Assembly: GCA_023334545.1 (NCBI GenBank)
Contig: JAADVB010000168.1
Location: 1 to 42,474, forward strand
Length of the DNA stretch: 42,474 bases
Source: Salisapilia sapeloensis CBS 127946
Lineage: Eukaryota > Protista > Oomycota
Reading direction: 5' to 3'
In this document: positions 1 to 25,797 of the stretch, in pieces
How positions within the stretch are numbered: position 1 is the first letter of the stretch
How the letters are laid out: each line of letters starts with the position of its first letter
Translations under genes and position numbers: made by a program
The notes under the pieces: model-generated
The model's database searches: none
What the model was told of the DNA's origin: nothing
The model's input: the letters and a program-made list of their open reading frames with translations, nothing else

Positions 1-699
1 CACATCATTCGTAGCATACCGAAAGTGGATATACTGCCGAAGCCGGCGCCGGAAGTGTAAAGCAAGCATGTTGTTAGCGCTTGTCTTCATCTGAATGGCT
101 GCATAGTTAATGATCGAACTTCTGTTTACAACTGCCACCGGGTGTAGGCTGTATTTGAGTGCGTAGGTCTTTGTAGAGTTGACAAGTCAGACCGAAACCC
201 GGGTATTTGGTAACGAGCGTTTTTTGTTTACCGTGCTTTGGGTATGTAAGCACAGCGGACTGACAGCGGTAAAAGAAGTTTTGGTCTAGTTGGGGTAAAA
301 CTTCCCGTCCTTGATGCATCGGCGAACATGCAAATTTACTAGATGTGAAGCTTCCGTAACGACTTGACGCATAACGACAGAAACTCGTCGTATCTCATCG
401 CACACTCTTCCTGGTGGACTCAACCGGGAAAATTTACAGGTGACGGTGGAAGTAGTCGTAGGGCCTGAGGTTGGCAGAAACGTGCCATTTCCTACAGGTT
501 GATCCAGCTCTACGCTTGAGTGGGTTTTAAGCACGGCGTGAGCGGATAGTTGAAAAGAGGGTGGTACCTCTTCAGAAGCTTTCCGCTTGCGTTCGAGTTG
601 TCTCTGAAAGTTGGGAGTTGCCATTTGCAGGCTGCGTGGACGTTTGAGTAATGAGGACTTCGAGGTCGTATGCGCTTGGGTCGATAAGTTGCGTTTCAT
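1..699 (-). mobile_element. 5' part of a probable Fanzor1 (eukaryotic TnpB-like) gene, truncated by the window edge and interrupted by two 1-nt indels
   Basis: Joining three segments on the - strand gives ...TVTCKFSRL..RVCDEIRRVSVVMRQVVTEASHLVNLHVRRCIKDG / EVLPQLDQNFFYRCQSAV...LYKDLR..QPT / PVAVVNRSSIINYAAIQMKTSANNMLALHFRRRLRQYIHFRY, with the last frame open to base 1. The EAxHLxNLH, LDQxFFYxC and N..LHFxxRLxxYI motifs match my recollection of the Fanzor1 N-terminal (WED/REC) region. The RuvC domain is not in the window. Confidence 0.68.
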
Positions 700-850
700 C
701 AATCAACTTCATTGCAGCAAGGCAAAAGGATAATGTAGGCACGATCTAAGAAGGCGCTGTTCGGAATTAACGGTACGACAAAAAAGACTTTTTATATTTG
801 TGTTTTGCTGACTTTCATTCTTGTGCTTTTAGCTAAAATTACCCAACTTG

Positions 851-922
851 TTCGATTTGCAAACCGCAAATAAATCGAATTAGTCCTTATGATTGGATTA
901 AAGTATATTTATTAACCAATCA
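851..922. repeat. Two adjacent inverted repeats upstream of the Fanzor-like ORF
   Basis: TTCGATTT(851-858)...AAATCGAA(872-879) with an inner ATTTGC/GCAAAT pairing option. TGATTGG-A-TTAA(890-901)...TTAA-CCAATCA(912-922). Confidence 0.6.
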
Positions 923-1563
923 GATGATTAGGTTAAACCTGAAATAGCACATGTCTTTTTTGTCCTTAGCACATACAAAAAGCAAGTGTTCGTTTTGGTG
1001 GGCGATTATCCGTGCGCGATTGATTCAAACAGGTTCAAAATATTTCGAATCAAACGCACAATACTTTCTTCTAGCATATCGGATTTGAACTATCCTTTGC
1101 CATTTGTGCTATTTTTTCGTTGCTATGAGTTCTAATTATGAGCTTTGTACAATGGCTATAAAGATGGGAATGTTGTAGACATCATTTGCACTGATTCCTT
1201 ACGGTAGTAGAGAATGAGCATACCAATGCCAACTAAACCAACGATGCAACATAGTACAATTCGTCAGTACGTACATGCTTTTCAATGCGTGTCATCGTGA
1301 TACGCCTTGCCAATTTTACAAGCTAGCACAGAGTATCTTGAGAATTAAGTGGTTAAAGACAAGTACTCAGCAGCAAAGGAAAAGCAAAGCTGGAAACAAC
1401 CAACACGTCGATGATATACTCTAAAATTCAGTAGCCTTAACAGAAGAAAAGCTAGCAAGAAAAAGATAGTACGCATGAATATGTCGATGTCGCAAAAGAA
1501 CCGTTTATTACAGCTGTAAGCAAAGAATCTAGAGCTCGTACTGCCACTGCATTCGCTTCAAAC

Positions 1564-2271
1564 TTACCAAGTCACAACTTTTCCTTCGTAATTGTACCAC
1601 TTGCCACTAAAGTCGGGTGTCATCTTCGTCAGTACGTTAGCCATGATGCCACTTGTGCTTTCATCAACACTGAGGACTCCGCTATATCCGTTTATGCTGG
1701 TAGCAACGTATCCCGGGCTTAAGAGGAAAGCATGGATACTTTCCTCCTTCATGTCCTCACAAAGGCTCAGCGTGAGCATGTTCAGCGCAGATTTCGACGC
1801 TCGATAAGGGACTGCTGAACCGGGAAACATCTTTATACTCATACTACCAAGTGTACTCGATATGTTCATCACGTATGCTTGATGGTCACTCGACCTCTCC
1901 ACTGCCGCCCTCAAGTTCGGACGAAAAGCTTGGGTCACCTGAAATGGACCGATAGCATTCACCTCGAATGACATTAGCATTTGGTGTTTCGTGGACTCAT
2001 TGACATTGCTTCCATGATCTATGCCAGCGTTGTTGATGAGGATGTCGATGGGAATTCCTTCACATGCTTTCGCGGCCTCCTGAATGGACGCTTCGTCCGT
2101 AACGTCTAGCTGAATGACCTTCAACGGGTTCAGTGCTTTCAGTTTGTCCGCTTTATCCGGCCGACGTGCAGTTCCGATGACCTTCCAACCAGCTTGAATC
2201 ATCTTTTCTACGAGACCGAGTCCGATGCCTTGGTTCGCACCTGTAATGAGGCAGGTCTTCTCGGTGCTCAT
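1564..2271 (-). CDS. Short-chain dehydrogenase/reductase, CsgA (C-factor)-like, intronless, 235 aa
   Basis: TGANQGIG Rossmann motif, NNAG, NISS and the YRASK catalytic YxxxK. First ATG is at 2271 (the ORF track starts at a GTG at 2352). Confidence 0.93.
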   Translation of the reverse strand: MSTEKTCLITGANQGIGLGLVEKMIQAGWKVIGTARRPDKADKLKALNPLKVIQLDVTDEASIQEAAKACEGIPIDILINNAGIDHGSNVNESTKHQMLMSFEVNAIGPFQVTQAFRPNLRAAVERSSDHQAYVMNISSTLGSMSIKMFPGSAVPYRASKSALNMLTLSLCEDMKEESIHAFLLSPGYVATSINGYSGVLSVDESTSGIMANVLTKMTPDFSGKWYNYEGKVVTW

Positions 2272-3295
2272 GGTTGATTTTCGTAGTCGGTGGTAGCTTT
2301 GTAAGTGCTTCTTCAGCTCCACGCACGTTTCGATATCATTGCGGATTTGCACATGATAAAGTAGGGATCAAAGTAAAGAAAGGGCCAATGCTGAAAATAA
2401 AGCTGTTTCGCTAAGTCGAAATTGCGATACTCTTCTCGCCTGAAAAGAGGCTTGCTGCAATAGCTTGTATGACGTAGCATCAAAATCTTTATCCGAGTCT
2501 CTTTCCCTAACCAAACGGTCTAAAATTTTGTAAGGGAGTTTCTATCTTGCATAGTCAAGGTCGAGTTGGTGCATCAACTGTGCTGAAAGCGAGGCGTTCG
2601 GACGGTATGTTTTGACACGATTATGATGACGGTATTGATCAACGATAGTAAACACCAAAGGGTGATCGTCACCGTTGTTGGCTGTATTGAAGCCTTTTTC
2701 AATCATGAAATTATCTAGCGCCGGAGGCGGCTAATACAGATCAATTTGGGTCATTCCATGACTTTTGTTTTTAATGACCAAGAATTTGGTCACGCGCTTC
2801 TTATAGCGGATGTGGCCACCAAGTTGATAGGTTACAATGCTCTAGTTGTGCTGCTTCGTGTACGCACGGATAAATTGTCCTTGTCCATTCACGATTCCAC
2901 TATAAGAACTTTTTGACCATAGAACCAATTGTCCGTAGGATGGGGGTCACAAATAGCATTGTGACCAAATCGAAATTTGACCTGCATGAGACCCCACCTA
3001 GATTACACGTAGGACAAGCACCTTATAGGAAAGTGTAAAAATCAAAGCATGAACAAATTCTTCTTTGCGTAGGTAAGAGGCGAAGAAAGTTTACCAACGT
3101 GGCACATTGCGCATAAATGGATCGTTGAATGAGTCGAAAACTCTATTTCCATCGACAAGCTTTCTTCGGAATATCAAGAACGACAATGATATCGTCTTAC
3201 GCTTGTTCTTTGGTTTGAATATCTGCATTAAGGTCTTTCATTTTGAAAGTTGCCAGTAAGATAAGAAGTCATACGCGAGAACGGAAGCAGCGATA

Positions 3296-23555: not shown

Positions 23556-25797
23556 ATGATCCCGAACTTGTGTGACGATGACGAGTTAAGACTTACCGAG
23601 AATGCAAACACACGGAATCGTTTTCAAGGATTAGAGCACAATCTAGATGAGGCTGATGGTGAGCATCCAGAGGAAGAGCTATCTGGCACAGCTTTAAAGC
23701 TGTCCAAAGTCATTGAGCGAGAAGCAAAGCGACGGGTGATACTGGAATCTGGTCAAGGGCCACAGTGGGCTAGTGTATACCATCAACTGGGCATTAATGC
23801 TAATAAAGACAACCATGCGTCGTTTATTACGGCGCGGCGAAACCATCTTACGAAAAAGAGACCGTCTGCAGCAATACTACCGGCTCCAGACCCGAAAGTG
23901 CTACGAAAAAGCATGCAAAAGGGAAAGAATGGAAGTTTGAACAATAGTATCGGAAATGAATATGAGCGCGGTCAAGATGAGAGATCAGGATCAGAGTTTA
24001 CTCTGACAAAGACACAGCAAATTTGGTTATTTATGGAGGATCCGAACTCATCAACGTCTGCATACTACTTTTCCATGTTCATGTTTGGCTTTATCACCCT
24101 CTCCACTCTTATTTTCATCCTTCAGACGGAAAGTCGTTTGATCCAGTTCGACTACGTTCTAGCTTGGTTTGAAATGATATGTGCTGTTGTCTTCACTATC
24201 GAGCTCATTCTACGTTTATGCTCGTGTCCAAGTCTCACACGCTTCGCCAAAAGTAAGTCCCTGTTTGACTTTTTAATGATATCACGGTCTCACCTTCGTG
24301 TCCACCATGATAGATTACCTAAACTGGATCGATGTGGCTTCCATTATACCATTCTACCTCGAAGCCGTTCTATCCGTCGAGTACGCAAGTGGCATGGGAG
24401 CACTTCGTATCATTCGTCTCGTTCGAGTTGCTCGAGTATTAAAGATGTCTCGCTATTCCTCTGCTATTCAAATATTTATCCAGTCGCTTATTGTGAGCAT
24501 GCAAGCCCTATCAATGCTCGTGTTTCTCATGGCTCTAGTTGTCATTGTCTTCTCTAGTGCTATATACTTTGCAGAGTTTACAGAGGACGGGTGTCGGAAA
24601 GGTGGATGGATAGGAGATTGCGATTCGGACAATGCCGAACGTATATATGCTTACTCGGGTGGTGAAGCTGCTGCACGAGGAAGCCAAGTGTTGCGAACAG
24701 ACCCAGATCTACCCTCTGGAAGATGCGTGTGTGTCGATCCTAATCCTTATACCAGCATCATCTCTTCCTTTTGGTGGTGTCTCGTTACCATGTCCACTGT
24801 CGGGTATGGCGACATGACTCCGGTCACCATGCAAGGCAAAATCGTAGGTTGCACTACATTGTTAACAGGCATGCTCGTTTTGGCTCTACCGATCACAGTT
24901 ATAGGGACCAATTTTCAGAAAGTCATGAAATCCTTAGCACAGGATACGATGAAATCAAATGTGGATTACCTAAAAGGCAAACGGATGATCTGCCGAAACG
25001 AAATACAAGCCATTTTAGACAGATTTCATGCCGTCGCAGATAACATACATCTAGATATTGACGATGTGATCAACGTCTACGACACAGATAATAGTGGCAT
25101 GCTTGAGAATGAAGAACTGAATCATTTTATGCAAGATCTAGAGGCATTGCAAAACCGAGCCTTTATGAGCCAGCACGCAGGTACAATCGAGCCATCAAAG
25201 TCTGTACGACCCATCAAACAACCTCGATCCGTCAAAAAAGTTCAAGAGGTTGAGAGCGAGAATAAACTACCGGATAGTCATGATACCGAGCGAAGAAGTT
25301 CCCATATTCCTTTACGAAAAGCAGCAACACAAACATCTTTGCGAGCAGATAGCTCGTCGTCACAAGCAAACAGAGCAGACCGCAGATCAACAGCACAAGC
25401 TCGACTAAGTGACGCTCAAGCAGCGGGATTAGACGATATCGTATCTCAATCATACAACGCTAGATATCGAACGACTGCCTCTCTCATATCTCCTCGGGCA
25501 TCTGAGATATTTATCCCGACATCGCTAGGTCCTGAAAGTACTGCAGAATCGACAGAAGTACCCTCAGTTTCTAATCCACATAAGGAAGATCTGTCCAATC
25601 TTTCGTATCCTTTAATTACCGATGAAAGTAGGAATAGTCTGCATGTAAGTGAAGAGATGCTCGAACGACGAATAGCGGAACTGAAGCATACTTGGGAAGA
25701 GCGACTTGTGGAGACAGAGCAACGCCTTGACACAAAGTTTCATAATTTGACTAAAATCTTGCTTCGAATTGAAAGTATGATGGAAATGCAAGAGTAA
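23556..25797 (+). CDS. Voltage-gated K+ channel (6TM, Kv-like) with C-terminal EF-hand (exons 23556-24252, 24314-25797; 726 aa)
   Basis: FMEDPNSS before S1; NWIDVASIIPFY (S3); LRIIRLVRVARVLKMSRYS (S4); SFWWCLVTMSTVGYGD filter; LALPITVIGTNF (S6); VYDTDNSGMLENEEL EF loop. Confidence 0.94.

What the first reader, a model, noticed from the sequence alone, without database searches (positions are those of the whole stretch)
1..699. Probable Fanzor1 (eukaryotic TnpB-like RNA-guided nuclease) gene running off the left edge
Seen: the two ORF-track fragments (286-702, 107-319) plus an unlisted open frame at 1-~141 join into ~230 aa with TVTCK..EASHLVNLH..LPQLDQNFFYRC..LY..IINYAAIQMKT..NNMLALHFRRRLRQYIHFRY. 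Established: Fanzor1 proteins are TnpB descendants carried by eukaryotic transposons, including in oomycetes, and use an omegaRNA encoded at the 3' end of the element. Inference: this is the N-terminal half of one; the RuvC domain, zinc finger and omegaRNA would lie left of base 1. It is the best candidate in the window for an uncharacterised RNA-guided system.
Basis: partly seen in the sequence, partly recalled or inferred. Interest (0 to 1): 0.8.

Follow-up and report, generated by a model that had tools for sequence, protein, structure and literature searches.

The report
Broken, transcribed Fanzor1 gene relic
The left edge of the window holds the first third of a Fanzor1 (eukaryotic TnpB-like RNA-guided nuclease) gene from a family already described in oomycete mariner transposons, but this copy is broken by two one-base frameshifts that are also present in its RNA, so it is a transcribed relic and not a new working system.

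Summary
On the minus strand of 1-702, three open pieces in frames f1, f0 and f1 are consecutive parts of one ancestral reading frame.

A profile was built from 42 Phytophthora/Nothophytophthora proteins, none taken from the window. It hits exactly these three of the window's 1,316 open stretches, in order: E 5e-19, 8e-10 and 9e-15, at profile positions 75-127, 126-176 and 181-226.

The same motifs sit in the N-termini of the published oomycete Fanzor1 consensus proteins PUl-1, PCa-1 and PSo-3 (Bao & Jurka 2013). Those proteins carry the TnpB signature further downstream. In a Phytophthora idaei locus, the ORF just after the N-terminal homologue has the DEYRTS-CxxC motif, and its only PDB match is Spizellomyces Fanzor.

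This copy is broken. A -1 shift lies at about 301-307 and a +1 shift at about 142-157. Contigs from eight RNA runs match the window without gaps, so the shifts are real. Translation from ATG 624 stops at TAG 288-286 after 112 residues.

The RNA is unspliced and about 2.66 kb long. Its 5' ends fall at 763-778 and it runs about 1.89 kb past the left edge.

The RuvC domain, zinc finger and omegaRNA lie outside the window and could not be reached.

First-reader notes of this scan report other Fanzor relics elsewhere in this genome (unchecked).

Verdict: a new, decayed member of a known family, of low to moderate interest.

The parts
763..778 (-). 5' ends of the transcript. RNA contigs of eight runs stop at 763, 768, 769, 774, 776, 776 and 778; there is no RNA from 783 to 1484.
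   Evidence: read laying. The left ends are sharper (1888-1892 nt beyond base 1 in three runs). A minor intron reads GT..AG on the minus strand. Both point to minus-strand transcription.
575..712 (-). Upstream 46-codon ORF in frame f0. Its ATG at 712 is the first AUG of the RNA, and it overlaps the Fanzor start. It is not homologous to the family.
   Evidence: list of ATGs; profile score -1.5 bits, E about 100. It has the highest host-like codon score of the region (0.32 per codon).
289..624 (-). Piece 1 (frame f1) from the probable start ATG 624. It holds a basic NLS-like patch (ERKRKASEE), a disordered linker, the first beta strand (TVTCKFSRL) and the first long helix (VCDEIRR...EASHLVNLHVRRCIKDG).
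   Evidence: hmmsearch E 5e-19, profile positions 75-127. Residue 1 of the homologues aligns at ERKRK. The AF2 model of homologue P0127 shows strand 83-88 followed by helices.
286..288 (-). TAG that ends frame f1. Translation from ATG 624 gives only 112 residues.
301..307 (-). Frame break 1 (f1 to f0; one base missing or two extra), at or beside the CCC run at 304-306 of the + strand.
   Evidence: Profile position 126/127 is reached by residue 134 of piece 1 (codon 303-301) and by residue 30 of piece 2 (codon 307-305). Sequence read.
155..307 (-). Piece 2 (frame f0): REVLPQLDQNFFYRC...YPGFGLTCQLY, the continuation of the REC-like helical region.
   Evidence: hmmsearch E 8e-10, profile positions 126-176. 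About 40% identity to Phytophthora proteins. The matching motifs FFYRC and TCQLY occur in PUl-1 and PCa-1.
142..157 (-). Frame break 2 (f0 to f1; one extra base or two missing), near the GGG run at 140-142 of the + strand.
   Evidence: Profile position 176 ends at codon 157-155, and position 181 starts at codon 144-142. The DNA run X1 carries a further +C after 141, which does not restore the frame.
1..144 (-). Piece 3 (frame f1): VVNRSSIINYAAIQMKTSANNMLALHFRRRLRQYIHFRYATNDV, open to the window edge. It is the most conserved block.
   Evidence: hmmsearch E 9e-15, profile positions 181-226. 61-65% identity over 40 residues to Phytophthora proteins. Near-identical block in PSo-3 and PCa-1.
515..567 (-). 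Minor 53-nt intron (GT..AG on the minus strand), seen in one 58-nt contig of one RNA run. All long contigs retain it.
   Evidence: table 5. Not seen in four further runs.

Best explanation
Window 1-624 (minus strand) is the 5' third of a Fanzor1 gene of the oomycete PUl-1/PCa-1/PSo-3 clade. Fanzor1 proteins are TnpB-derived, omegaRNA-guided DNA endonucleases. In Pythium and Phytophthora this clade rides in Tc1/mariner-type DNA transposons.

The part in the window would encode an NLS-like basic patch, a disordered linker, the first WED beta strand and the first REC helices. In an intact protein those parts hold the guide RNA and read the target-adjacent motif (TAM).

This copy is a relic. One -1 and one +1 single-base shift, about 150 nt apart, put the middle 50 codons out of frame. 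A ribosome starting at ATG 624 stops after 112 residues.

The locus is still transcribed from its own upstream region as an unspliced RNA of about 2.66 kb. That length fits a full-length Fanzor1 gene of about 790 codons plus its 3' tail.

Shown here: the homology, the order of the pieces, the positions of the breaks, the presence of the breaks in RNA, and the extent of the transcript. Inferred: the mariner carrier, the presence of the nuclease half to the left, and loss of function.
For: (1) Exact words of the pieces (FFYRC, HLVN, HFRRR) occur in the Fanzor1 protein file of Bao & Jurka 2013. Reading that file shows colinear matches in PUl-1, PCa-1, PSo-3, PUl-3 and PUl-4. Those proteins continue into GIDPG..., DEYRTS-CxxC...C..C and NRDVNAA, the TnpB/Fanzor signature.

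(2) An exhaustive HMMER search with piece 1 found seven oomycete N-terminal fragments at E 1.6e-5 to 9e-4. A profile of them found 42 Phytophthora/Nothophytophthora proteins.

(3) Profiles made without any window sequence hit only the three pieces among 1,316 open stretches. E-values were 5e-19, 8e-10 and 9e-15, at contiguous profile positions. Pieces 2 and 3 played no part in retrieving the family, so their hits are independent.

(4) tblastn of P0129 and P0127 against the whole window gives E 6e-19 and 4e-17, only at 7-657 on the minus strand.

(5) Link to the nuclease half by tools: in P. idaei locus L003 the ORF 90 nt downstream of N-terminal homologue P0150 reads ...GDWS...MDEYRTSVTCSCCH.... 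It has a weak Cas12f1-like TNB hit (PF07282, E 0.024). Its only PDB match is Spizellomyces Fanzor 8GKH (E 0.012).

(6) The N-terminal profile's best PDB sequence hit is also 8GKH, though not significant (E 0.13).

(7) RNA contigs of eight runs (X2, X3, X4, X5, X8, X9, X10) lie on 1..763-778 with 3 mismatches and 0 gaps. They run 1218-1892 nt beyond base 1. There is no RNA at 783-1484.

(8) Other copies exist. One is a transcript contig about 85% identical over 570-747. Another is a DNA contig that joins 470 to about 665. DNA depth over 228-552 is 1.6-3 times the single-copy depth.
Against: No Pfam, NCBIfam or PDB sequence hit for the pieces themselves. This is expected, because Fanzor N-terminal halves are highly variable and all defining motifs are C-terminal (PMC3627910).

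The structure search was inconclusive. The AF2 model of a homologous fragment has pTM 0.45. It gave no Foldseek hit below E 1, and Guillardia Fanzor appears only at rank 31 with Z 4.5.

The nuclease half itself was never seen for this locus. At least one relative, P. citrophthora locus L001, is a solo N-terminal remnant wedged between host genes, so an N-terminus does not guarantee a C-terminus.

No mariner-type terminal repeat like that of PUl-1 or PUl-4 was found in the window.
Confidence: 0.85

Rival explanations
1. An intact, working Fanzor1 gene; the two frame breaks are assembly or sequencing errors in the window.
For: Both breaks sit at or beside 3-nt G/C runs, where long-read assemblies often err. 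They compensate each other in length. DNA run X1 differs from the window by one base at 141.
Against: Contigs assembled independently from eight RNA runs of a 2019 study agree with the window over 1-763/778 with no gap. The X1 variant (+C after 141) does not restore the frame either. Codon usage of the pieces is no better than that of chance ORFs. Relatives in Phytophthora genomes are likewise mostly fragments or frameshifted copies.
Confidence: 0.04
2. A solo N-terminal remnant. Only the first 230 codons or so of the Fanzor gene survive here, and the 1.9 kb of RNA to the left belongs to something else, such as read-through into another gene or a captured sequence.
For: P. citrophthora homologue P0127 is such a remnant: 258 residues, with the next host gene 550 nt downstream. 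The left-hand DNA was not seen.
Against: Frame f1 is still open and still matching the family profile at base 1 (profile position 226 of 375). The RNA length from ATG 624 (about 2.5 kb) fits a protein of about 790 residues, like PCa-1 (788) or PUl-1 (802), plus a short tail. An unchecked first-reader note (s1-288940) reports a 1,671-letter decayed Fanzor1 with RuvC codons on another piece of this genome. That size would complete this gene, but the link is not shown.
Confidence: 0.1
3. Not coding at all: chance open frames inside a non-coding or untranslated RNA. One version is the long 3' UTR of a + strand gene that ends at TAA 58-60 or TGA 91-93.
For: Both + frames are open from the edge to those stops. 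Codon usage is not gene-like. A 138-codon open run is only mildly unusual.
Against: The three colinear profile hits at E 5e-19 to 8e-10 cannot arise by chance. The sharp transcript ends lie to the left and the ragged ends at 763-778, and the one intron seen is GT..AG on the minus strand.
Confidence: 0.01

Closest known systems
Oomycete Fanzor1 families PUl-1 (Pythium ultimum, 802 aa), PCa-1 (Phytophthora capsici, 788 aa) and PSo-3 (P. sojae, 716 aa), Bao & Jurka 2013, PMC3627910
   Same: Same N-terminal architecture in the same order: a basic KRK patch, a linker, 'CKL.R.C...L..EI....V.MKQVQLE..HL.NLH.LRCL', 'LP.L.Q.FFYRC', 'TCQLY', then 'N.NMLALHFRRRLHQYIRFRYA'. Identity is 40-65% in these blocks. 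The gene is single-exon and low in copy number.
   Different: This copy carries two frameshifts. Its carrier transposon and termini are unknown: PUl-1 and PUl-4 have 24-26-bp TIRs and TA duplications, and no such TIR was found in the window. The host is an oomycete-like organism far from Pythium and Phytophthora; a neighbouring SDR enzyme is only 51% identical to its best hit.
Spizellomyces punctatus Fanzor1 (SpuFz1, PDB 8GKH), the biochemically and structurally characterised Fanzor1
   Same: It is the best and only PDB sequence match for the C-terminal ORF of the P. idaei relative (E 0.012). It is also the top PDB hit, though not significant, for the N-terminal family profile (E 0.13). The general plan is WED/REC at the N-terminus and RuvC/TNB at the C-terminus, with an omegaRNA from the 3' end of the element (PMC10432273, PMC11423790).
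   Different: There is no significant sequence or fold match of the window's part to SpuFz1. Activity, TAM and omegaRNA are unknown here, and this copy cannot make the full protein.
Bacterial TnpB (IS200/IS605, e.g. ISDra2)
   Same: It is the ancestor family of Fanzor. The beta strand followed by a helix at the start of the conserved core resembles the TnpB N-terminal strand-helix (my own reading, not tested).
   Different: No Pfam HTH_OrfB_IS605 or OrfB hit for the pieces. The setting is eukaryotic, with an NLS-like patch.

Membership tests
Fanzor1 (eukaryotic TnpB-like nuclease) | RuvC catalytic residues in the motif D-X(125,275)-[TS][TS]-X-X-[C4]-X(5,50)-RD (PMC3627910) | not testable with these tools
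   They would lie left of base 1. That DNA could not be fetched.
Fanzor1 (eukaryotic TnpB-like nuclease) | C4 zinc finger / TNB domain (PF07282) | not testable with these tools
   Outside the window. It is present in relatives: the PCa-1 and PUl-1 text and the L003 ORF (PF07282 E 0.024; 8GKH E 0.012).
Fanzor1 (eukaryotic TnpB-like nuclease) | Significant, colinear sequence homology to bona fide Fanzor1 proteins | tested here: met
   Profile hits at E 5e-19, 8e-10 and 9e-15 in contiguous order. tblastn E 6e-19. Motif matches to PUl-1, PCa-1 and PSo-3.
Fanzor1 (eukaryotic TnpB-like nuclease) | Uninterrupted reading frame (a functional gene) | tested here: not met
   Two frame shifts at about 301-307 and 142-157. 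They are present in RNA contigs of eight runs.
Fanzor1 (eukaryotic TnpB-like nuclease) | omegaRNA encoded at or after the 3' end of the gene | not testable with these tools
   The 3' end is about 1.9 kb outside the window. Only assembled contigs, not small-RNA reads, were available.
Tc1/mariner-borne Fanzor element (PUl-1/PUl-4 type) | 24-26-bp terminal inverted repeats flanked by TA duplications; optionally a mariner transposase upstream | tested here: inconclusive
   No match to the PUl-1/PUl-4 terminal consensus with up to 3 mismatches. No other copy in the window to define ends. The 700 nt upstream hold no ORF over 49 codons. Divergence is large, so absence proves little.
Repeated (mobile) element | More than one copy in the genome | tested here: met
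   A paralogous transcript contig at about 85% identity. A paralogous DNA contig with a roughly 193-nt deletion, and 1.6-3 times the single-copy depth at 228-552. The copy number appears low, about 2-3.

The most novel reading that the evidence does not exclude
The relic is kept transcribed because its RNA still does something. It might supply an omegaRNA or guide-like RNA to an intact Fanzor1 paralogue elsewhere in this small (about 24 Mb of contigs) oomycete-like genome. Alternatively, an internal start (ATG 90) might yield an N-terminally truncated, repurposed protein from an intact left-hand part.
Probability: 0.07. Interest if true: 0.55.

Novelty: new member of a known kind. Interest (0 to 1): 0.22.

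Why it matters
It extends the known oomycete Fanzor1 clade to a lineage that is absent from the protein databases. It also shows that a frameshifted copy can remain well transcribed, at roughly half the contig depth of the neighbouring SDR gene.

For a search for new RNA-guided systems it is a negative result. The family is known and this copy is dead in its first third.

Its practical value is as a pointer. The same genome may hold a better-preserved copy, and the family profile built here finds such copies even when no ORF track shows them.

Tried and rejected
(a) Pfam and NCBIfam scans of the three pieces found nothing relevant.

(b) phmmer of the pieces against PDB sequences found nothing.

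(c) A word-indexed protein search with piece 1 found nothing, because its length filter excludes long relatives. An ESM Atlas look-up was uninformative.

(d) I tried to fetch the DNA left of base 1 by exact look-up of window proteins: the SDR, the 350-aa ORF, and the 113-, 137- and 70-aa pieces. None is on record. The organism's own proteins are not in the databases; the best SDR hit is 51% identical.

(e) Two metagenome scans with pieces 3 and 1 found no relatives.

(f) I considered a third frame break that would make the upstream ORF 712-575 the true N-terminus. By eye it resembled PUl-1's 'DETQ...ETQ' region. I rejected it: the profile gives -1.5 bits, while frame f1 from ATG 624 aligns with residue 1 of the homologues.

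(g) Structure route: the AF2 model of homologue P0127 (pLDDT 66, pTM 0.45) gave no Foldseek PDB hit under E 1. The VIA wide search put Guillardia Fanzor at rank 31 (Z 4.5), within the noise for helical fragments.

(h) Rfam, repeat and bacterial promoter scans of 1-1600 found nothing relevant.

(i) The first exhaustive protein search job was lost and had to be rerun.

(j) I did not paste the published PUl/PCa sequences into a script. Comparison with them is by exact-word search and by reading. The computed statistics use database proteins of the same family.

Full report
**What is in the sequence**

On the minus strand of 1-702 there are three open stretches.
- Frame f1 is open from 702 to 289. 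It has ATGs at 699 and 624 and a TAG at 288-286.
- Frame f0 is open from 394 to 110.
- Frame f1 is open again from 186 to 1 and runs off the edge.

On their own these frames are not impressive. A 138-codon open run turns up in 2.6% of shuffles of 800 nt. About four such runs are expected per shuffled 42-kb window. Codon-usage scores of the pieces are 0.03, 0.02 and -0.04 per codon. Those match chance shadow ORFs (0.05 +/- 0.08), not host genes (0.16 +/- 0.06).

Pfam, NCBIfam, PDB sequence search, the word-indexed protein search and the ESM Atlas gave nothing for the pieces.

**Transcription**

Logan contigs of eight RNA runs from one 2019 study lie on 1..763-778 with three mismatches and no gap. 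They continue past base 1 for 1218 nt (three runs), 1735 nt (one run) or 1888-1892 nt (three runs).

No RNA covers 783-1484, so this is not DNA contamination.

The left ends are sharp and the right ends are ragged. The one minor splice seen (515-567) is GT..AG on the minus strand. The RNA is therefore a minus-strand transcript of about 2.66 kb that starts near 770.

Its contig depth (20-56) is about half that of the neighbouring SDR gene.

**Identification**

Exact words from the pieces (FFYRC, HLVN, HFRRR) occur in the protein file of Bao & Jurka 2013 (PMC3627910).

Reading that file shows that Pythium ultimum PUl-1, Phytophthora capsici PCa-1 and P. sojae PSo-3 carry the same blocks in the same order as the window. 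PUl-3 and PUl-4 do so more distantly.
- The window's 'VCDEIRR...MRQV..EASHLVNLHVRRCIKDG' corresponds to '...EIKKVCV.MKQVQLEGWHLANLHVLRCLKEG'.
- 'LPQLDQNFFYRC' corresponds to 'VPELEQMFFYRCC'.
- 'TCQLY' corresponds to 'KTCQLYW'.
- 'NNMLALHFRRRLRQYIHFRYA' corresponds to 'LNMVALHFRRRLHQYIRFKYA'.

Those proteins are 716-802 residues long and single-exon. They continue into the TnpB/Fanzor signature (GIDPG..., DEYRTS-CxxC...C..C, NRDVNAA). PUl-1 and PUl-4 sit in Tc1/mariner elements with 24-26-bp TIRs and TA duplications.

**Computed support**

An exhaustive HMMER search of 1.84 billion representatives with piece 1 found seven oomycete N-terminal fragments (E 1.6e-5 to 9e-4), plus two low-complexity hits that I discount.

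A profile of the seven retrieved 42 Phytophthora/Nothophytophthora 'hypothetical proteins', none with a Pfam domain.

Profiles built from these proteins contain no window sequence. They hit exactly three of the window's 1,316 open stretches:

| Stretch | Frame | E-value | Profile positions |
|---|---|---|---|
| 289-702 | f1 | 5e-19 | 75-127 |
| 110-394 | f0 | 8e-10 | 126-176 |
| 1-186 | f1 | 9e-15 | 181-226 |

The next best stretch has E 0.65 (the seven-member profile gives the same picture).

Pieces 2 and 3 played no part in retrieving the family, so their hits are independent confirmation.

tblastn of single members finds only this place in the window (E 6e-19 and 4e-17).

Block identities are about 45% for the piece 1 core, about 40% for piece 2 and 61-65% for piece 3.

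**Link to the nuclease half by tools**

In P. idaei locus L003, the ORF that begins 90 nt after N-terminal homologue P0150 reads '...GDWS...MDEYRTSVTCSCCH...'.

It has a weak Cas12f1-like TNB hit (PF07282, E 0.024). Its only PDB match is Spizellomyces Fanzor 8GKH (E 0.012).

The N-terminal profile's top PDB hit is also 8GKH, but it is not significant (E 0.13).

**The gene is broken**

The contiguous profile coordinates fix the two breaks.
- Break 1: f1 to f0 at about 301-307, beside the CCC run at 304-306.
- Break 2: f0 to f1 at about 142-157, near the GGG run at 140-142.

This agrees with note s1-282609.

The shifts cancel in length, but in frame f1 the stretch between them holds two stops. 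A ribosome starting at ATG 624, which aligns with residue 1 of the homologues, ends at TAG 288-286 after 112 residues.

The RNA contigs carry both shifts, so they are not assembly errors.

DNA run X1 has a variant with an extra C after 141. That variant does not restore the frame either.

**Upstream ORF**

A 46-codon upstream ORF (712-575) overlaps the start. I first took it for the true N-terminus, but the profile rejects this.

**Other copies**

- A low-depth transcript contig is about 85% identical over 570-747.
- A DNA contig joins 470 to about 665.
- DNA depth over 228-552 is 1.6-3 times the single-copy depth.

This indicates a small family of about 2-3 copies. There is no second copy inside the window.

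Relatives in Phytophthora genomes are also mostly relics. L001 is a solo N-terminal remnant between a CLC channel gene and a PEX1-like gene. L003 and L005 are split over several frames.

**What could not be done**

The DNA left of base 1 could not be reached. Exact-protein look-ups failed. The organism is not in the protein databases; its best SDR hit is 51% identical, to Pythium. Metagenome scans found nothing.

So the RuvC residues, the zinc finger, the omegaRNA and the element ends remain untested for this locus.

The structure route was inconclusive. The model had pTM 0.45, there were no Foldseek hits, and Guillardia Fanzor scored Z 4.5 at rank 31.

Unchecked first-reader notes report other Fanzor relics in this genome. 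One is a 1,671-letter decayed Fanzor1 with RuvC codons (s1-288940), followed by a candidate omegaRNA (s1-288954). Its size would complete this gene, but I could not test the link.

**Verdict**

The Fanzor1 reading is right in terms of homology. However, the locus is a transcribed, frameshifted relic of a family known since 2013, not an uncharacterised system.

It is a new member of a known kind. Interest is low to moderate.

Noticed in passing
window 2438-2788: RNA contigs show a + strand GT..AG intron at 2467-2534 (68 nt) in a transcript that abuts or overlaps the 5' end of the minus-strand SDR gene (CDS 2271..1567). One contig joins it to SDR sequence.
   Followed up: no
window 1484-2423: The short-chain dehydrogenase gene (235 aa from ATG 2271) is expressed, with a sharp 3' end at 1484-1488. 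Its best database hits are only 51% identical (Pythium brassicae, P. oligandrum) and 40-43% identical (Phytophthora). The organism is therefore an oomycete-like lineage not represented in the protein collections.
   Followed up: partly
window 575-712 (-): The first AUG of the relic's RNA opens a 46-codon ORF. It has the most host-like codon usage of the region (0.32 per codon) but no homology to the Fanzor family. It may be chance or a small upstream ORF.
   Followed up: partly
window 875-925: An inverted ATTGG/CCAAT pair lies about 110-160 nt upstream of the transcript 5' ends.
   Followed up: no
window 79, 136, 141, 146: There are strain or copy differences. G79T is seen in all RNA runs and in DNA run X1. 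C136T is seen in RNA only. A146G and +C after 141 are seen in X1 only. The X1 contig has 1.6 times the single-copy depth, so it may be a collapsed paralogue.
   Followed up: partly
L001 5001-5777 (Phytophthora citrophthora JASMQC010000014.1): A 258-residue solo N-terminal Fanzor1 remnant is annotated as a hypothetical protein. It sits between a CLC channel gene and a PEX1/AAA gene, with no room for the nuclease half.
   Followed up: no
L003 3965-6200 (P. idaei) and L005 400-3740 (P. kernoviae): These are Fanzor1 copies of the same clade, split over several reading frames and annotated as separate hypothetical genes without Pfam domains. Such relics seem common and unrecognised in Phytophthora annotations.
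   Followed up: partly
window 5157-27114: The rest of the window is ordinary compact housekeeping DNA: a FYVE protein, a peroxiredoxin, an OCRE protein, a P450, an M16 peptidase, a pseudouridine synthase and an ion channel split over two overlapping ORFs at 23556-25797.
   Followed up: no
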